Assembly: GCA_053919585.1 (NCBI GenBank)
Contig: CM132817.1
Length of the DNA stretch: 64,000 nt
Source: Euprymna scolopes
Lineage: Eukaryota
Reading direction: 5' to 3' (one strand)
Both the position numbers and the translations under genes were made by a program. The notes under the pieces were generated by a model. That model searched no databases. It worked only from the letters and a program-made list of their open reading frames with translations, and was not told where the DNA came from. Positions 4,346-17,200 of this stretch are shown here, piece after piece. Each line of letters opens with the position of its first letter. The stretch's first letter is position 1.

Positions 4346-5814
4346 ACTTCCACAGCGTCTAATTCTTGTTGCTAATCTAAGAAAATTATGATTTTCTCTA
4401 GATACAAGAAGGGTTCTGTTAGTATTCACCATGTAAAATGTTTTGTACTGATTAAATCCAAAAATTATCAGAATAAATATAAAGGAGTAAATAAAGTTTC
4501 TTGATTTAATGCAAAATTTCAATAAGGAGTGATTCTTTTTTTTTTAATCTTTCCCAAATTATCCAAATTTCTATCTTTTTCAAAATATCCAAATCTCTTC
4601 CGCTTTGTTTTACAAGATGCTTAGATGGTAAACAGAATAATCTTTCTATGTTTAAGGAGGGCGATTGCTTTTTGATTATCTTGTAGTTTACTGTTAATTC
4701 CTATTGTATTCAAATAAATTAGAGTGAAATTGGTTTCGACATTACATCCGAACAACTTATTTTTACTTAAACCACAATTTAGTAAGATGAAAAAAAAAGT
4801 TATAGAGTTTAAGAAAAATATAGTCGCCATCTTTTAAAATAAGTCAAAACTAGACTATAAGTACATAACTCAAGTTCATAAATTTTAGATAAGGACAGGA
4901 AACTATTTTTGTTTATTTTGTTGTTTTTTTGTTTGCTTTTTTTTTTTTAAAGAAAAAAAGATTCCCTGTACTTAACAAGTAAAAACTTGAGTTATCATCT
5001 TCCTTAGCTAACCCTTTCTTTGTTTACAAAGACAGCGACTCTATTTCCCAGTAGAGTTTCATTTTGGCATTTCACGTGTACGGTAAAACTTGCTATAACT
5101 TAGCGTTTTTAATGCTATTTTTTATTTAAGTAAAAAATAGTTTGAGTAAAACCACAAATTCACTAAATAATTTATATGACTGAAATAGAAATTAACGAAA
5201 TTATTTCATTAGTTTATTTGAAATAACGAAAAATAAAAAATAACTGTTTTGTACAACTAAAATGAATTAAATAAATACTTAGTTGTGTGTGTCTCTCTCT
5301 ATCTCCATAATTCGAAAACAAAACTGAAAAAACAATCATTTGTTTTTGCCAGGAAATATTTATTTTTGAAAAGATTAAACTATACACAGAACTTTTTTTG
5401 TTGTTGTTGTTTTAAAATATTTATGGTTAAAAAAGAAAAAAATGCAACATAAACAAACATGGCCTTGAGTTGACCCTGACCGATGATAATCCTCGCCCAA
5501 TGGGCCAGATTAACTATTTTCTAGTCTGATCTTCTATCGGTACCTTCGGTTTCACGGAAACACTAGAAACTCAGTCCGCAGGGTTAAAGATACCGAATGT
5601 AACCGATATTTCAGCCAATTCCTATAACAAATAAATTCAAGCGGTCAGGATCTGGAAAGGAAACATTTAAACAAAAGCATAAATTCATCTTCATTTCAAC
5701 AATCGCACGAAAAAAAATAAATGTATAAAAAAGTGGGGTAGAGGTAAACAAGTGCTCGTCGAAACACACGCACAAATCAGAACACACACGCATTAGATTC
5801 TGCACGTAAACACA

Positions 5815-5850
<36 letters not shown>

Positions 5851-6057
5851 ATATCCAATAAAAGATTTAAAGTAAGCGATTATTTGCTTCACAACTTTCG
5901 AATAAAAAAATAATGCCGACATTAAAATTGAAATAGGACGGGTTCTTTTCTGAAATAGTTGCTCCGTCGAGAAATAGGTTTTTCTTTCAGGATATTAAAA
6001 ACGTTTATCATTTATATAAATAATAACTACTTTTTCGTCTATAAATTTTAATAGTTA

Positions 6058-6300
6058 TAATTCTAGTCTCCGAAAATTGCTTTCGAAATCAGACAGTTTG
6101 AAAACTTCATAAGTCATTCTCAAGTATTCACGTTAACGATGTAAACATCATGTCGGACATGTTTTTTTTTAATATATACATATATATATTTTTTTTAAAC
6201 ATGTCCGACACAATGTTTACATCATAGACTTACACATTTGAAAGCATTTTTAAAACGTTTCAATTGTCGGATTTATAAAGTAATTTCGAGGCTAGAATTG
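6058..6300. repeat. Palindromic (foldback) MITE-like hairpin
   Basis: gatgtaaacat..tgtcggacatgttt / aaacatgtccgaca..atgtttacatc, with outer aattctag/ctagaatt arms. Confidence 0.75.
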
Positions 6301-6570
6301 TTGTTTTTTTATGGTCGACAAAATGCGCCTCTGTCATATTTAAGAACATAGCGTTCTTGGATACAACAGAGGCGCGTTAAAAAATTTGTTTTTATTTTGA
6401 TTTAAAATATTTTAATAAAAAAATGAAAAAACATTAATTTTCGCATGCACCCCGCCCTGAGGTATCAAAGAACATGGCGTTCTTCGATATGACAGGGGCG
6501 CATGCAGAAATTACGGCTTTCGTTTCAATTTTTAAAAAAATATAAAATAAAATAAAAAAGTTATCTTTAC

Positions 6571-7057
6571 CTGAAGTTTCGTTTAATGACATTTGTTGTT
6601 CGGTGTTAAATTTATCATTAATTCTCGTCGGCCCTTGTACTCTCCGGCCTTCTTCGATCTCCTCCCCAACATCTCCAGTCCCGTCGTTTAAATTCGTGCG
6701 ATTGCGTACGTCACTTCGTCGTTCCTCCTCTTCCTCCATTGACTGCTGCCTCGGATCCGCTCTAATATTATTATTATTCTGATTATTATTATTATTCGTT
6801 ATCTGGTTTTTCGCTTTTTCCCCGTCGCCGTCGTGGTCATGGTGGACTTGAAGCTTCGCGTTTTCGACATCGGGACAAGATGGTCTATCATTAAAACACG
6901 GGGTGACCATGGCTTCCGCTAATGGGCTCGAAGTCTTACCGGACGAATCCGCAACCATACTGCAGGCTCGATGTGGCACAAAAACTCCATCGGACTCGAT
7001 TCGCGGACGTTTAGGTGAAAACATCGCCACCGTCTCGTCATTATCTTTGGCAGCCAT
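6571..7057 (-). CDS. First coding exon of a divergently transcribed gene with a low-complexity N-terminus and NLS-like SPKRPR; tentatively a SIRT1-like sirtuin
   Basis: GC/CpG-richer ORF MAAKDNDETVAMFSPKRPRIESDG...SLNETS ending at a phase-1 donor (TCA G|gtaaag). The ATG lies in a YY1-like AAACATGGCTGCC context. SIRT1 identity is inferred only from the KRPR motif, acidic/disordered composition and DNAJC12 adjacency; no catalytic domain is in the window. Confidence 0.7.
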
Positions 7058-7692
7058 GTTTGGTCACTGATTTGCGCATGTACAAAAAGCTAGCGCACGC
7101 ACACAGCCATACGCACACATATCTAACCACAGACAAATACACACATTAATAGCTACACACGAGTTAGCTAGAAAAATCTCCATATAGGCACACTACTGAA
7201 AACAAACGTACATCCGCATTTAATCAAATAAATACAAATCACACTAGTTTCGTAATTATTATTGAACAATTTTTATTTTAATTTTGATTTTATTTTGTAT
7301 TTTAAATATTAAAAACCATTTTATTTTTATCTTTTATTTGAATTAGTTTATAACAAAATCCGAAAATATGGCAAGTTTAAAATACCCATTTCATCTAGTT
7401 AATGTTTTCAAAACATTTTACGTTTAGCTGAATTCTTTGGTGATATTGTAATTTTTAAGCTATTAATTTTATTTACTTTTCTGGCTTCTTCTCAAGATAT
7501 AATTTTTGAATCTTTATTTGATCAGTAGAGTTTATGAACGAAATTAGTTCTTATTTTTTATGTATTCGTATACTAATATATATATTTATATATTATTCTG
7601 TAAGTGAATCCACACTTTCTGTGTGGACCGAGCCAGAACAAGTAGGTTTCGAATTAAAAAGAATCTTTTAAGAAAATTTCAAAACATTGAAT
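7058..7692. promoter_or_regulatory. Bidirectional promoter/5'UTR region between divergent ATGs
   Basis: Start codons at 7057 (-) and 7693 (+) are separated by 635 bp. No recognisable TE. Partial NRF1-like TGCGCATG at ~7073. Confidence 0.65.
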
Positions 7693-7779
7693 ATGGCAAA
7701 TATCGACGCGATTTTCGACTATGAAAACGACCCGAATGACAATTATTATTCACTTCTTGGCTGCACTCAACTTTCCACA
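7693..7779 (+). CDS. DNAJC12: DNAJC12 exon 1 (MANIDAIFDYENDPNDNYYSLLGCTQLST)
   Basis: Matches the DNAJC12 N-terminus (DAI..Y.....DYY.LLGC..LS); phase-0 donor gtaagt at 7780. Confidence 0.93.
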
Positions 7780-7912
7780 GTAAGTATCAGGGAGAGTAAA
7801 ACCTCTGCTTTTTGCAATTAGGAAAAGCGGGATTTCGGTTTTTGTAATTCAAAGACGGTAATTAATTCGCTTTGTTTTTTATTTATTTTATTTTTTTGTT
7901 TGTTTTTTTTTC

Positions 7913-8157
7913 TACAAAGGAGTCACCACTTATCAAGGCCCAGAGTACAGTGGTCAAAGGGAACATTTCAGTCATCGTTAGTAGTGGAAATTTGGTAAAT
8001 TGGATTACTTAAGAATTTTTTCACGTTGGACTTGAAGACAATCATATTGTAGTCAATTGGAAAGTAGGAAAACGGAACAGAGTTCCACAGACGTGCAGTT
8101 CTAAGAAAAAAGCTTTGTTCATGGAATCTACGTTTAGGTACAGATGTCTCTTCTGTG
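7913..8157 (-). mobile_element. CR1-group 3' fragment immediately upstream of the BEL element
   Basis: KRRFHEQSFFLRTARLWNS remnant and the family 3' end. Confidence 0.8.
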
Positions 8158-8173
8158 GTATCAGAAAAAGTTA

Positions 8174-8392
8174 CGGTACTCACCTTCCTGCAACTTCTGG
8201 TGGAGATGCTTGAAACTAGGAAGTGAGTGCCTTGGCCTTGCTAGTGACTAATTTTATTTGTAATCAGCATCACGTGGCACTTGTCTGCTATAAAAGAGAC
8301 TTAGTGCACACGTGTTTGTTGGGTGTTACTGTTTTCTTTATTTTTTTCTTCTCTTCTTCCCTTTTACAGCTCAATCGTTATTTTTGCATTTT
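8174..8392 (+). repeat. 5' LTR (partial) of the BEL/Pao element
   Basis: Direct repeat of 9987-10187; contains CACGTG and TATAAAA; joined directly to integrase sequence (gag/PR/RT missing). Confidence 0.75.
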
Positions 8393-9372
8393 GCCACAAG
8401 CGTTGCAAGCACCTTGGCGTTTCCACAGCCCTGAATAAGGTGAGGCTGTCCGGCTATTGGATACCTCAAGGCAGACAGGCTGTAAAAAAGGTCTTATTTG
8501 GATGTGCCCTGTGCCGGAAATTTAACACCTTCTCCTACCTAAGGATGACGGATTTACCCAAGCATCGGGTTAATATGATAAAACCCTTCCTACATACCAG
8601 AGTAGATTATACGGGTCATCTGTGGGTCCTGAATGGTGGAGAAAGGACGAAAATGTATATCCTTGTATTCACTTGTTTGGAAGTGAGGGCAGTACATTTG
8701 GAACTGATTGAAGACATGACGATCCACTCATTTTTGATGGCGTTTATCCGATTTACTAACATTTATGGCATGCCATCACACGTATACAGTGACAATGCCA
8801 AGTCCTTTGTTGCAGGATGTGATATAATTCACGATGTATTCTCATCCAGTGAATTTAAGGAGTTTGAGTGATTGTGTAATTCAGCACATTAAGATACCTT
8901 TACACTCACCCTGGTATGGAAGCGTTTGAGAACGATTAATTAAGACCATAAAATCTTGTGTGTATAAATTGATTGGCCATGCCAGCTACTCTTATTTCAA
9001 TCTGTTGACCATCCTCTCTGATGTTCAGAATGCTGTCAATGATCGACCATTGACCTATAGGAGCTCAACAGATCCAAGCTTGGAGATCATAACTCCGAAT
9101 CATTTTTTGCACCCAACCGTCAACCCAAGGATAATATTGAGACTGAACAATTGGAGCATCTATCAAGTCGAACCTCCTTCCAAAAGACAGCTACTGGACT
9201 CCTTGACTACAAGAGACAAAGCATTAAAAACGTTTAAAAGGATCTGGTACGAAGACTATTTATTGAGCCTAAGGGAACATGCCCAAAAGCAACCAAAGGG
9301 AAATGTATCTGGAGTCAAGATTGAGAGATTGTAATAATTAAGATACCCAATAAAACTCGACCATTTTGGGCC

Positions 9373-9777
9373 TTGGGTAGAGTCCCACATCTTTACCCAG
9401 GAGATGATGGATTGGTTAGATCTGCTCAAATCAAGCGAGGAGATGGATCCTTGCAGGTCCATTCTCTGAAACACCTCCATCCTTTGGAATTGTCGATTGA
9501 GGATCCTGTTGAGTGTCCTAGTTTGCTACTACAAAATCCAGATGACTCTGTCGATTCTGATGACCATTCGTCCTTTCATCCTGATGATCTTCCAGCAGAA
9601 GATAATTGTCGCATTTGGATCTGTGCTGGTTGTGACCAACCAGATGATGGTAGTGCCATGGTCTGTTGTGATCAGTGTGATAACTGGTATCATTTTTATT
9701 GTGTGGGTATATATCAACCTCCACCAATCGAGGAAGGATGGTATTGTCAGGATTGCCTGAACCGGAGAGACGACTAA
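9373..9777 (+). pseudogene. Integrase C-terminal domain, acidic linker and C4HC3 PHD finger (TAF3-like)
   Basis: IWICAGCDQPDDGSAMVCCDQCDNWYHFYCVGIYQPPPIEEGWYCQDC in the same open frame as the DUF5641-like segment. Confidence 0.9.
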
Positions 9778-9816
9778 TGAGTCAACCCTCTCAAGCCTGG
9801 TCATGATGATTAATAA

Positions 9817-9986
9817 NNNNNNNNNNNNNNNNNNNNNNNNNNNNNNNNNNNNNNNNNNNNNNNNNNNNNNNNNNNNNNNNNNNNNNNNNNNNNNNNNNNN
9901 NNNNNNNNNNNNNNNNNNNNNNNNNNNNNNNNNNNNNNNNNNNNNNNNNNNNNNNNNNNNNNNNNNNNNNNNNNNNNNNNNNNNNN
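9817..9986. other. Assembly gap (170 N)
   Basis: Run of N. Confidence 1.
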
Positions 9987-10187
9987 CGGTACTCACCTTC
10001 CTGCAGCTTCTGGTGGAGATGCTTGAAACTAGGAAGTGAGTGCCTTGCTAGTGATTAATTTATTTGTAATCAGCATCACGTGGCACTTGTCTGCTATAAA
10101 AGAGACTTAGTGCACACGTGTTTGTTGGGTGTTTTTTTTTTTTTTCTCTTCTTCCCTTTTACAGCTCAAGCGTTATTTTTGCATTTT
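9987..10187 (+). repeat. 3' LTR of the BEL/Pao element (start hidden in the N gap; may extend to ~10265)
   Basis: Near-identical to 8174-8392. Confidence 0.75.
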
Positions 10188-10289
10188 CCTATCAAGATCC
10201 TTCCGGATCTACTATTACTATTATTCCCCGAAACTACCGGACCTTCTCTACCTGGAAATGTTCATTTTGACAGATTTCAAATACTTTAT

Positions 10290-14261: not shown

Positions 14262-17200
14262 ACATGGAGGCCCAGAAGCCACTCGGCGACAAGGGTTATT
14301 GTGTGTACAGTAATCAATGAGATAGTATCGTAGTAATAGTTAGTATTAGATTTGATAAAGTGTCATTACTTAAGGGGGCGGTTCATCAGGAATTTGCTTG
14401 TGTTGGACTTGAAGACATCTAAGTTGAAGTCTGGAGTGAAACAGGCAAGCGGCAGAGAGTTCCATAGGCGTGCAGTTCTAAGAAAGAAGCTTTGTTCTTG
14501 GAATCTACGTTTTGATTTAGGGACGGATGAAATGTGGGAAAAATTGACAGTGGTTTCAACTAGTCGGATGTTTTTCGTGAAAGATTGGCGAGGGGGGACC
14601 AGAGAATGGAGCTCAGATGAGCACTTGCCATGGAAATAACGATAAAACAGACAGGCTCGCAACGTCTCTTCTGTGGGAGAGAGGTTGCAGGGAAGAGAAA
14701 AGGGCATCCCCCACCAAGCCACAAAGTCTATTTTGTACTCTGTCAAGGCAGGATAGGCTGTTTTTAGCAGCTCCTGCCCAGATGTGGCAGCAGTACTCCA
14801 TCCTTGGACGTACTTGGCTTTTATATAGATAGAGAATTGCATCGTTAGTGAGATATCTTCTGGAGCAGTAGAAGGATCCCACCATTTTCCCAGTAACCTT
14901 GGCCACAGACTTGATATATGTGTTCCATTTCAGATCAGGAGTAAAGGTCAAACCCAGAAGCTTATCAAAACATGGGGCCTCCCCTAGATGAGAGCCATCC
15001 ATTTCAGTTGATGCCAGATGGAGATCAGAGCGTTTATGATGTAATGATTGGAGCTTGGTCTTAGATGCATTAAAGGTAACAAGCCACCTCTTCCTCCCCA
15101 CTGTATCACACGCTCAAGATCTAAGGAGAGAGAATCAGAGAACATTGTCATTTACGGCCTTTGATGTGTTGCCATAGATAGTTGTGTCATCAACATAGAT
15201 GTCGACGAATGATTTTAGTATGTGTTTTGGGAGATCATTGATGTAGATCAGGAAAAGAGTTGGGCCCAGGATGGACCCCTGAGGGACTCCAGCATTAATA
15301 CTGTGGGCCTCTGATTTTTGCCCATCAACCACTACTCTTATGAGCCTATCAGAGAGAAATGATTTAATGATTGAGAAAACATTTCCAGTTATATCATAGC
15401 TGGAAATCTTGTGAAGTAGGCCTTTATGCCATACCTTATCGAAGGCCTTTGATATGTCAAGAGCAATTGCCCTAGAAATTAAGCCTTTTTCAAGAGATCC
15501 GCTAATCCTATGAGATATAACTGTTAGCACGTCTGCTGTAGATCTAACGGAACGGAAACCATATTGCGTGTCACTAAGAAGGTTATTTCTGCTGAGGTGG
15601 TTGACTACTCTTCTATTTAATATGGATTCCACCAACTTATGACACACAGGAGACTCAATGGTCTGTACTGAGAGGGAGATGACTTATCACCTGAATTTTT
15701 AAATACAGGGCATACTGATGTTTTCCAGGGTGTTGGAAAGCACTTCTCCTTAAGGCAATGCTTAAACAGTTTGGTAAGTATGGGGGCAAGTTCTGGTTGT
15801 AGCTTTTTTAACACTATAATTGGAATTCCGTCAGGACCAGTTGCTTTACTGGAATCAAGGTTCTTGATTAGCTTGGCGACCTCATGCACAGATATTTGTA
15901 TGTTACCTAGCGTGTTGTGTGTTATAGGAGGAAATACGGGGAGTTGATGGCTTTTGTCGCATAGGGTAGAATTTGCTGCAAATTCATGGCAAATAGTTTG
16001 GCCTTGTCGGATGCTGGCGAGATGACCTCTGGTCCATTGATAATGGTTGGGATCGAACACACGCTTCTGTTCAGGATCCTATTTGCTATTTGCCAGAACT
16101 GGTGGGAACCAAGCCGCTGCTTAGCTACTTTGGATTTAACGGATTGAGCATATAGCTCTCTTGCATTTTTTATTACTCTTTTACAGTGGTTGCTGGCAAT
16201 CCTGAAAGCACCTTTAGTCTCAGTGCATCTATTACATTGGTAGCTATGGAAAAAGTGATTTCTGTGCGCAATGGCAGCAGCACATTCAGGGGAGAACCCT
16301 GGCTGGCTGTTAGGTTTTGTTGGGATTTTTTGGATGGTATGAATTGGCCTATGCCTACAAGTAACCATTCGGTCAGGTCTGATACTATAGAGGACACATC
16401 CTTTTTAAACATGGAATGGAGAGGTAGATCAGATATAAATGTACGGAAGCTATCCCAGTCAGCCATAGAGTATCGATATACAGTATGGTGGAGAGGTACG
16501 TCTGTAGACTCATTATATTTCATTTTTATCTTAACTGATACAACTGAGTGGTTGGAGGATCCCAGAGGAGATAGAACGGAACATGAGCATAGCTCAGGGG
16601 AAGTGGAGAGAAAGAGGTCTAGAAGGCTTGCATACTGACCGGTAGTATCGGGCACACGGGTGGGCTCGCGAACAATCTGAGTGAGGTCATAGGCAATGGC
16701 AAAATCATTACAGAACCTCCCCTCATCATCAGTCTTATTTGAGTGGGTCAGCCATTCCACATTATGAACATTGAAGTCACCGCAAATGTGAATGTTAGCC
16801 AAGGGATGAGCAGACAGGATGTGGTCAATTTTCTCCGATATACTCTTAAAGATAGTAACTCCGCTGTCGTGGGGGGCGATAGAGGGCAAATATAAATGCG
16901 GTGGTGTAAGCAAATGCAACCCGGAAGCACATATAAGGTAAATTAGGGTCTTCTCTGGAGATATCTCTGCCACACGGGAAGCCATCTTTAATGTAGGCAC
17001 ATATTCCATGCCCATGGCGATCTTGGGGATCAGATTTAGATGTTAAGTTAGAGTATCCTTTAATTATGAACTCATCTAGGGAGGTGGTCGGCCCTATTCC
17101 AGTTTCGCTTAGAAAGAATATGTCCGGTTTCATCTCCTGTAATTGTGTTTCAACCTCTGGAAGGTTGGAACATAGACCCCTGACGTTGGAGAAGGAGACA

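What the first reader, a model, noticed from the sequence alone, without database searches (positions are those of the whole stretch)
8392..9777. BEL/Pao integrase with a C-terminal TAF3-type PHD finger: candidate H3K4me3-guided integration module
Seen: the DUF5641-like integrase tail (LYPGDDGLVRSAQIK...LHPLE) continues without a stop through an acidic linker into a complete C4HC3 PHD finger (9613-9759), inside the LTR pair. Known: the pattern IWIC.GC..PDDGS.M..CD.CD.WYH..CVGI...PP....W.C..C closely matches the TAF3 PHD as I recall it, and the H3K4me3 cage residues (W in IWIC, D in PDDG, M, W in DNWYH) are all present. PHD fingers in BEL/Pao elements are usually reported at the Gag N-terminus; the classic integrase-tail chromatin reader is the chromodomain of Ty3/Gypsy chromoviruses. 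Inference: this family may have captured a host PHD at the same structural position as that chromodomain to steer integration to active promoters. I cannot confirm it is undescribed.
Basis: partly seen in the sequence, partly recalled or inferred. Interest (0 to 1): 0.9.

Follow-up and report, generated by a model that had tools for sequence, protein, structure and literature searches.

The report
BEL/Pao integrase carrying TAF3-like PHD finger
A dead copy of a mollusc LTR retrotransposon ends its integrase in a histone-reading PHD finger copied from the transcription factor TAF3; the same fusion is intact and conserved in a whole subclade of these elements, so it probably ties integration to active chromatin, though that is not yet shown.

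Summary
Window 9373-9777 is an open 134-codon tail: the end of the BEL/Pao integrase C-terminal domain (DUF5641), an acidic linker, then a PHD finger (9622-9756). The integrase upstream (8392-9372) is broken by two frameshifts and several stops. The copy also lacks about 4.4 kb (gag to RNase H).

The fusion is not a chimera or misassembly. The genome holds at least 150 copies in at least six BEL/Pao lineages. Some are young, with 99.8% identical LTRs and single open frames of 1,886-1,920 codons running Gag-PR-RT-IN-DUF5641-PHD. One lineage has tandem PHDs; another adds an AT-hook-like tail.

The PHD's closest solved relative is the TAF3 PHD (E 1.5e-18; 0.8 Å to the H3K4me3 complex). All four cage residues are present.

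On an integrase-only tree, 9 of 10 PHD-bearing elements group together among 120 PHD-less relatives.

Promoter targeting is unproven. The window copy lies about 380 bp into intron 1 of a DnaJ gene, beside a CpG-rich promoter. However, flanks of 20 young PHD copies were no more CpG-rich than flanks of 20 PHD-less copies.

I found no paper or named protein with this architecture. The scan has noted the same fusion 16 times elsewhere in this genome.

The parts
8158..8391 (+). 5' LTR remnant, truncated at its 3' end and joined directly to the integrase zinc-binding domain (internal deletion junction at 8391/8392)
   Evidence: blastn to the 3' LTR remnant (89.5% over 219 bp) and to both LTRs of the full-length C29 copy L033
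8392..9372 (+). Broken integrase: H2C2 zinc-binding domain and catalytic core remnant, with two frame changes (about 8865-8890 and 9325-9400) and in-frame stops
   Evidence: Weak Pfam matches to Integrase_H2C2, rve and rva_4. tblastn to the intact family-A polyprotein: residues 1386-1558 in frame 1, 1551-1731 in frame 2, 1705-1848 in frame 1
9373..9492 (+). End of the integrase C-terminal domain (DUF5641; ...GDDGLVRSAQIKRGDGSLQVHSLKHLHPLE), first part of the open tail ORF 9373-9777
   Evidence: Pfam DUF5641 at E 0.06 on this fragment, E 1e-8 to 1e-11 in intact relatives. The AF2 model of the L032 tail shows an SH3/Tudor-like barrel
9493..9612 (+). Acidic, low-complexity linker of about 40 residues
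   Evidence: Translation. The equivalent stretch in the L032 model has pLDDT below 50, i.e. predicted disordered. Its length and sequence vary between lineages
9622..9756 (+). TAF3-type PHD finger (C4HC3). Cage residues W82, D91, M96 and W105 of the ORF correspond to mouse Taf3 W868, D877, M882 and W891. W82 (9616-9618) lies just before the first Cys
   Evidence: Pfam PF00628 at E 1.7e-10. PDB sequence search finds TAF3 PHD at E 1.5e-18. Cage residues from PMC12238850. Alignment
9775..9777 (+). Stop codon of pol, 6 codons after the last PHD cysteine
9817..9986 (.). Assembly gap (170 N) between the 3' untranslated stretch and the 3' LTR remnant; not filled
9987..10245 (+). 3' LTR remnant. Homology to the C29 copy's LTR stops at 10245, about 210 bp short of that copy's LTR end, so no target-site duplication could be confirmed
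7693..7778 (+). Context: exon 1 of a DnaJ (DNAJC12-like) gene (MANIDAIFDYENDPNDNYYSLLGCTQLST, GTAAGT donor). Exon 2 with HPDK lies near 23,3xx. The element starts about 380 bp into intron 1
   Evidence: Translations. Pfam does not score the 28-residue exon. The likeness to DNAJC12 is from memory
5001..7750 (.). Context: CpG-rich, promoter-like zone (CpG observed/expected 1.2-2.1, against 0.62 for the whole window) ending about 400 bp before the element

Best explanation
What it is (shown). Window 8158-10245 is an old, dead, internally deleted copy of a BEL/Pao LTR retrotransposon. In this family and its sister lineages, Pol ends with the integrase C-terminal barrel (DUF5641), a disordered acidic linker of about 40 residues, and a PHD finger derived from the PHD of the TFIID subunit TAF3. 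The module is an ancestral, maintained part of one BEL/Pao subclade. At least six lineages in this genome carry it. Some are young and appear in RNA libraries. One has two PHDs in tandem, and one sub-lineage adds an RRRGRPSLLP (AT-hook-like) tail.

How it most likely works (inferred). After reverse transcription, the integrase carries the PHD on a flexible tether. The PHD binds the free N-terminus of histone H3 with K4 trimethylated in a cage formed by W, D, M and W, as TAF3 does. This holds the intasome on promoter-proximal nucleosomes of active genes and biases where new copies insert. That would parallel the chromodomain of chromoviruses and the MBD of CopiaMBD elements.

The architecture and the TAF3 origin are near certain. 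The confidence given is for the targeting mechanism.
For: - Family-wide fusion: at least 151 matches of the tail plus PHD in the genome's own assembly, many inside open frames of 1,875-1,953 codons.
- L031 has 502-bp LTRs with one mismatch, a 4-bp TGTA target duplication and a 1,920-codon ORF. L032 has a 1,886-codon ORF.
- Pfam order in intact copies is DUF1759, Peptidase_A17, RVT_1, Integrase_H2C2, DUF5641, PHD.
- TAF3 is the best solved relative (E 1.5e-18). The model superposes on TAF3 PHD-H3K4me3 (5wxh) at 0.8 Å with 67% identity.
- W868, M882 and W891 are kept in 9 of 11 PHDs from retrotransposon lineages 37-71% identical to each other, and all zinc ligands are kept. The cage residues are defined in PMC12238850.
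- On an integrase-only tree, 9 of 10 PHD-bearing rows form one group (SH-aLRT 87, inside a starred set) among 120 PHD-less rows. This implies long retention.
- Contigs from RNA libraries span IN, PHD1, PHD2 and the stop without a gap (1,963 nt and 703 nt).
- The PHD with H3 residues 2-41 scored 0.35 against a best control of 0.01. The tool calls this weak support: that mark was reached by 51 of 78 solved complexes and 2 of 108 mismatched pairs, but a pass at 0.60 or under is more often wrong than right unless the guess was likely beforehand. The three runs agree in at least 54% of their contacts, and the partner's pLDDT is at least 51. Because a similar complex is already solved, the pass may come from memory.
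- The window copy sits about 380 bp into intron 1 of a DnaJ gene, at the edge of a CpG-rich promoter zone.
Against: - The only systematic test I could run gave no support. The 3' flanks of 20 independent young PHD-bearing insertions (family A) had pooled CpG observed/expected of 0.95-1.05. Flanks of 20 PHD-less sister-family insertions had 0.82-0.96. Mann-Whitney p was 0.15-0.76, and there was no gradient with distance. The proxy is crude and the sample small.
- D877 is replaced by P, Q or E in the AT-hook sub-lineage.
- The second PHD of the tandem lineage lacks W868.
- W894 of TAF3 is F in all but one retrotransposon PHD.
- It is not known whether the PHD stays on mature integrase after protease cleavage.
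- The window copy beside a promoter is a single case.
- No histone-binding or chromatin data exist for this species in what I could reach.
Confidence: 0.45

Rival explanations
1. The PHD is functional but serves a step other than target choice. It might tether the pre-integration complex or Pol to chromatin for nuclear retention. It might mimic or compete with TAF3 at H3K4me3 promoters to favour the element's own transcription or to resist silencing.
For: The domain is conserved, yet flank composition does not differ from a PHD-less sister family. PHD-less relatives carry a different conserved C-terminal motif (RPKR..RGRP..YY), so the tail region as a whole may hold the targeting function.
Against: The PHD sits at the extreme C-terminus of integrase, behind a flexible linker. 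That is the arrangement of known integrase targeting modules: the chromodomain (Gao et al. 2008) and the MBD, both as cited in PMC6673714. Nothing points to a separately expressed PHD protein.
Confidence: 0.25
2. The PHD reads a different ligand from H3K4me3, so any targeting would not be promoter-directed. Candidates are unmodified or lower-methylated H3K4, another protein's N-terminus, or nuclear phosphoinositides, which the TAF3 PHD is reported to bind.
For: The abstract of PMC4429956 reports the TAF3 PHD as a phosphoinositide interactor. D877 is lost in one sub-lineage, W868 is lost in the second tandem PHD, and W894 is F.
Against: W868, M882 and W891 are kept in nearly all lineages. The window PHD keeps all four cage residues and is 65% identical to TAF3. 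The model matches the H3K4me3-bound TAF3 structure at 0.8 Å.
Confidence: 0.15
3. The fusion in the window is a one-off chimera, a misassembly next to the gap, or a host exon lying inside the element.
For: A 170-N gap lies 40 bp after the stop codon, and this copy is rearranged.
Against: The same junction occurs in at least 150 places in the genome, in intact ORFs of about 1.9 thousand codons, in contigs of unrelated public assemblies, and in RNA-library contigs. The host TAF3 PHD lies elsewhere (C28) and is split by an intron.
Confidence: 0.01

Closest known systems
Chromoviruses (Ty3/Gypsy elements such as Tf1 or MAGGY, with a chromodomain at the integrase C-terminus; Gao et al. 2008, as cited in PMC6673714)
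   Same: A histone-mark reader domain is appended after the integrase C-terminal barrel. The expected role is tethering the intasome to marked nucleosomes.
   Different: Different superfamily (BEL/Pao, not Ty3/Gypsy). Different fold (zinc-binding PHD, not chromodomain). Opposite expected chromatin: H3K4me3 euchromatin and promoters rather than H3K9me heterochromatin. Function here is untested.
CopiaMBD retrotransposons of arthropods (PMC6673714)
   Same: A host chromatin or DNA-mark reader captured by an LTR retrotransposon, proposed to bias integration. Flank-composition analysis is used as the test.
   Different: That case involves an MBD reading methyl-CpG in Copia elements, and binding was shown experimentally. 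Here a PHD is expected to read H3K4me3 in BEL/Pao, nothing is shown experimentally, and my flank proxy gave no difference.
[quoted passage not shown]
   Same: A PHD finger as an accessory domain of a transposable-element protein. PMC6673714 calls such domains 'widespread in eukaryotes'.
   Different: Those are other element classes and positions, and their origins are said to be hard to trace. Here the PHD is specifically TAF3-like, sits at the BEL/Pao integrase C-terminus, and defines one subclade. I found no paper describing this arrangement.
TAF3 PHD finger (TFIID subunit 3; PDB 2k16, 2k17, 5wxh, 5c13)
   Same: 65-67% identical over 48-52 residues. Same zinc ligands and the same H3K4me3 cage residues (W868, D877, M882, W891). 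Modelled backbone within 0.8 Å.
   Different: No histone-fold (Bromo_TP) domain. It is encoded without the intron that splits the host PHD after WYHW. W894 is F and G884 is C in the window lineage. The context is a retrotransposon polyprotein.

Membership tests
BEL/Pao LTR retrotransposons | Pao-type aspartic peptidase (Peptidase_A17) in the order Gag, PR, RT, RNase H, IN | tested here: met
   Peptidase_A17 at E 1e-31 to 1e-35, with DUF1759, RVT_1, Integrase_H2C2 and DUF5641 in that order, in intact relatives L031, L032, L038 and L039. The window copy keeps only the IN-to-PHD part.
BEL/Pao LTR retrotransposons | Long terminal repeats flanking the internal region, with a short target-site duplication | tested here: met
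   L031 has 502-bp LTRs 99.8% identical and a TGTA duplication. The window copy has LTR remnants only, and no duplication could be confirmed.
PHD finger (Pfam PF00628) | C4HC3 zinc-ligand pattern, scoring above the Pfam gathering threshold | tested here: met
   41.2 bits against a cut-off of 24, covering the full 47-position profile. All ligands align with TAF3.
TAF3-type, H3K4me3-reading PHD | Closest to the TAF3 PHD by sequence and by fold | tested here: met
   E 1.5e-18 for TAF3, against 8.7e-12 for the next family, MLL3. Foldseek matches 5wxh and 5c13 at rmsd 0.8-1.0 Å with 65-67% identity. Non-retrotransposon hits in a library of 1.84 billion proteins are TAF3 proteins.
TAF3-type, H3K4me3-reading PHD | Cage residues W868, D877, M882 and W891 (mouse numbering; PMC12238850) | tested here: met
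   The window PHD has W82, D91, M96 and W105. In other lineages D877 varies, and one tandem PHD lacks W868.
TAF3-type, H3K4me3-reading PHD | Actual selective binding of H3K4me3 | not testable with these tools
   There is only an in-silico co-fold with unmodified H3 residues 2-41: score 0.35 against a best control of 0.01, called 'weak support' and possibly from memory of solved complexes.
Integrase-borne chromatin-targeting module (works like the chromovirus chromodomain) | Reader domain placed C-terminal to the integrase C-terminal barrel, in the same reading frame | tested here: met
   The frame is continuous in intact copies. The model shows a barrel, then a disordered linker, then the PHD.
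   A CpG observed/expected proxy on flanks of 20 PHD-bearing and 20 PHD-less young insertions showed no significant difference. No gene annotation or H3K4me3 data were available.

The most novel reading that the evidence does not exclude
A whole subclade of animal BEL/Pao retrotransposons, abundant and apparently still active in this mollusc genome, uses a TAF3-derived PHD finger (single or tandem, with or without an AT-hook) on its integrase to read H3K4me3 and insert next to active promoters. That would be an undescribed euchromatin-seeking counterpart of the heterochromatin-seeking chromoviruses, and a natural promoter-targeting integrase.
Probability: 0.3. Interest if true: 0.8.

Novelty: new variant of a known kind. 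Interest (0 to 1): 0.55.

Why it matters
Integrase-borne chromatin readers are the clearest examples of how retrotransposons choose where to land. The established cases read repressive marks: the chromodomain reads H3K9me and the MBD reads methyl-CpG.

A conserved reader of an active-promoter mark on a BEL/Pao integrase would be the opposite strategy, in a superfamily whose targeting is essentially unstudied. The host here is a 5.9-Gb genome where these elements are numerous and young.

It would also be a datable case of capture from a core transcription factor. The host PHD is split by an intron and the element's PHD is not. If the mechanism holds, the small PHD-linker module would be a ready-made tether to H3K4me3 nucleosomes. 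If it fails, the conserved domain still needs another explanation.

Tried and rejected
- One-off chimera or misassembly: rejected.
- Host exon or domesticated gene: rejected. The host TAF3 PHD is at C28 and is split by a 7.5-kb intron. Only 4 of 9 copies of the window's family keep the tail open, as expected for neutral decay.
- Promoter-targeting proxy test: no difference between PHD-bearing and PHD-less families. I first misread a pooled value by ignoring locus orientation and corrected it.
- Looking for named proteins with DUF5641 plus PHD: three searches found only unnamed contig proteins and host TAF3s. The ESM Atlas look-up gave only sub-threshold leads.
- Literature searches for BEL/Pao with PHD, TAF3 with retrotransposon, and DUF5641 found nothing relevant.
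- Pfam on the short DnaJ exon and on the ORFs upstream on the minus strand gave nothing, so the SIRT1 side of the proposed bidirectional promoter is unverified.
- Predicted complex of the PHD with the H3 tail: weak support only, score 0.35 against 0.01 for the best control.

Full report
**1. The observation**

It starts with an integrase zinc-binding motif. It later runs through ...LYPGDDGLVRSAQIKRGDGSLQVHSLKHLHPLE, an acidic stretch, and IWICAGCDQPDDGSAMVCCDQCDNWYHFYCVGIYQPPPIEEGWYCQDC. The stop is at 9775-9777.

Pfam gives these matches:
- PHD (PF00628) at E 1.7e-10, 41 bits against a cut-off of 24, on nt 9622-9756.
- A sub-threshold DUF5641 match on the first 28 residues of ORF 9373-9774.
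- Weak Integrase_H2C2 and rve matches on 8392-8868.

- The frame is not continuous from 8392. Nine stops lie between 8869 and 9322. Homology to an intact relative changes frame twice. Only 9373-9777 is open.
- The flanking repeats are LTR remnants (8158-8391 and 9987-10245; 89.5% alike over 219 bp). The 5' remnant is joined directly to the integrase zinc finger. Compared with the full-length but decayed copy on C29 (L033), about 4.4 kb is missing.

A 170-N gap (9817-9986) precedes the 3' remnant. I left it as it is.

**2. It is a family trait, not an accident of this copy**

The 134-residue tail finds at least 151 places in the window's own 5.9-Gb assembly. They fall into three groups:
- Nine copies of the window's own family, 81-99% identical, all decayed.
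- A family at about 61% identity with many open frames of 1,938 codons.
- A family at about 53% identity with open frames of 1,875-1,904 codons.

L031 (C13) has 502-bp LTRs with one mismatch, a TGTA target duplication and a 1,920-codon ORF. L032 (C5) has a 1,886-codon ORF. Pfam reads both as DUF1759 (Gag), Peptidase_A17, (RVT_1), Integrase_H2C2, DUF5641, PHD. That makes them BEL/Pao elements.

- L031 ends in two PHD fingers in tandem.
- Searching with the host TAF3 tail revealed three more BEL/Pao lineages with a terminal PHD: L038, L039 and L040.
- Several of these lineages end PHD-...RRRGRPSLLP, an AT-hook-like motif.

**3. Beyond this genome**

A search of 1.84 billion representative proteins found the DUF5641-PHD junction in unnamed contigs of other public assemblies. 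P0021/P0172 is a 1,767-residue Gag-Pol-PHD. Others are P0147, P0008, P0015 and P0018.

One such contig is 71% identical in DNA to copies in this genome. Another is only about 66% identical, and only in the reverse-transcriptase region.

Of the 120 closest BEL/Pao polyproteins, only three carry a PHD. The rest end in an acidic linker and a conserved RPKR..RGRP..D(D/E)QFxYY motif.

On a tree built from integrase columns only, 9 of the 10 PHD-bearing rows form one group. Its support is SH-aLRT 87, and it lies inside a starred set that also holds two PHD-less rows. P0147 sits apart on a long branch. This is a quick-search tree, so the grouping is supported but not proven. It fits one old acquisition that has been retained, plus possibly a second.

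**4. Origin and likely ligand**

- By sequence, the closest solved relative is the TAF3 PHD (E 1.5e-18, about 65% identity). The next family scores 8.7e-12.
- Non-retrotransposon hits in the protein libraries are TAF3 proteins with a Bromo_TP domain plus a PHD.
- The host's own TAF3 PHD lies on C28 and is split by a roughly 7.5-kb intron after WYHW. The retrotransposon PHDs are uninterrupted, which fits capture from a processed transcript.
- The retrotransposon PHDs are no closer to cephalopod TAF3 than to fish TAF3 (44-62% identity), so the capture is not recent.
- PMC12238850 places H3K4me3 in a cage of D877, M882, W868 and W891. The window PHD has all four.
- Across lineages, W868, M882 and W891 persist, with two exceptions: the second tandem PHD (W to C) and P0147 (W to Y). 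D877 becomes P, Q or E in the AT-hook lineages. W894 is F in nearly all.
- An AlphaFold model of the L032 tail (mean pLDDT 75) shows a helix, a five-stranded barrel, a disordered linker and the PHD. Foldseek matches the PHD to TAF3-H3K4me3 (5wxh) at 0.8 Å, and the barrel to Tudor-type barrels.
- A co-fold of the window PHD with host H3 residues 2-41 scored 0.35, against 0.01 for the best of three controls. The tool calls this weak support: that mark was reached by 51 of 78 solved complexes and 2 of 108 mismatched pairs, but a pass at 0.60 or under is more often wrong than right unless the guess was likely beforehand. The three runs agree in at least 54% of their contacts, and the partner's pLDDT is at least 51. 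It also warns that the pass may reflect memory of solved complexes.

**5. Activity**

Family A has near-identical LTRs, intact ORFs and unique flanks at 20 sites. Contigs from oligo-dT and poly-A RNA libraries labelled as mollusc or invertebrate metagenomes span IN, both PHDs and the stop without a gap (1,963 nt and 703 nt). Depth rises towards the 3' end. Contigs cannot prove transcription.

**6. Does it steer integration?**

The window copy starts about 380 bp into intron 1 of a DnaJ gene. Exon 1 is 7693-7778, and exon 2, with the HPDK motif, lies near 23.3 kb. The copy sits at the edge of a zone (5001-7750) with CpG observed/expected of 1.2-2.1, against 0.62 for the whole window. That is one case.

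As a proxy test I compared the 3' flanks of 20 independent young family-A insertions with those of 20 insertions of a PHD-less sister family. That family has 1,840-codon ORFs and a tail ending ...NPYIYY.

| Measure | PHD-bearing family A | PHD-less family C |
|---|---|---|
| Pooled CpG observed/expected | 0.95-1.05 | 0.82-0.96 |
| Median over 650 bp | 1.02 | 0.95 |

Mann-Whitney p was 0.15-0.76, and there was no gradient with distance. The test therefore gives no support. It is small, one-sided and indirect, so it does not refute the idea either. Both families' flanks are richer in CpG than the window average, which I cannot explain.

**7. What is known**

PHD fingers in transposable elements are on record for these groups (PMC6673714; PMC8557442):
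- CR1-like non-LTR elements;
- REM1 and other Chlamydomonas elements;
- Chlamys Penelope-like elements;
- Rehavkus DNA transposons.

Chromodomains and an MBD on LTR-element proteins are the established targeting precedents. I found no paper that describes a PHD on a BEL/Pao integrase or a TAF3-like PHD in any retrotransposon. I also found no named protein with DUF5641 plus PHD. Subscription journals and Repbase are outside my reach.

This scan has noted the same fusion 16 times on other DNA of this genome. One followed-up note reached a similar conclusion.

**8. Verdict**

- The architecture is a conserved trait of a BEL/Pao subclade.
- The targeting mechanism is a reasonable inference (about 0.45) that my one proxy test did not support.
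- I rate it a new variant of a known kind: a retrotransposon integrase carrying a captured chromatin reader.

Noticed in passing
L039:5808-8102 (G000 C2, about 160.156 Mb): An open frame of 765 codons lies downstream of pol in one PHD/AT-hook BEL/Pao lineage. It has no Pfam match and could be an env-like third gene.
   Followed up: partly
Proteins P0180-P0295: PHD-less BEL/Pao relatives share a conserved extreme C-terminus: an acidic linker, then RPKR..(A)A..RGRP..D(D/E)QFxYY. This looks like a different, undescribed tail module at the position where the PHD clade has its finger.
   Followed up: no
L031:7625-7823 (3' untranslated region of family A): A stretch of about 200 bp has roughly 100 times the depth of the rest of the element, in both DNA and RNA runs, with many loose ends at 7765-7812. 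It looks like a very abundant short repeat embedded in or shared with the element.
   Followed up: no
G000 contig C46 (219.6 Mb) and C27:107-115 Mb: C46 holds 17 of 150 PHD-tail hits and 11 of 150 PHD-less hits, although it is 3.7% of the genome. C27:107-115 Mb holds about 10 copies with the same truncated 136- or 226-codon frames, which suggests segmental or tandem duplication.
   Followed up: no
Flanks L046-L086: Flanks of young insertions of both BEL/Pao families, with and without the PHD, have CpG observed/expected of about 0.9-1.0, against 0.62 for the 64-kb window. Either both families prefer CpG-rich (unmethylated?) DNA, or the window is unrepresentative.
   Followed up: partly
L041 (G000 C28:91716500-91726499): The host TAF3 PHD is split by a roughly 7.5-kb intron right after WYHW. 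Its sequence is almost identical to that of Acanthosepion pharaonis TAF3 (P0004).
   Followed up: yes
Proteins P0010, P0016, P0012: Public proteins of 570-1,380 residues carry three TAF3-like PHD fingers. P0012 is a mite TAF3 with Bromo_TP. P0010 and P0016 have no other Pfam domain.
   Followed up: no
window 8013-8135 and 14390-14512; window 14350-16400 minus strand: A 123-bp repeat (78% identical) lies just upstream of the element's 5' LTR and again at 14.4 kb. A run of minus-strand ORFs at 14.4-16.4 kb with GC 0.41-0.45 suggests another transposable element in the same intron.
   Followed up: no
window 23,26x-23,35x (+): Exon 2 of the DnaJ gene (VEQIITEYKVRALLYHPDKNPNDAQ) lies here, so intron 1 is about 15.5 kb and is filled with repeats.
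   Followed up: partly
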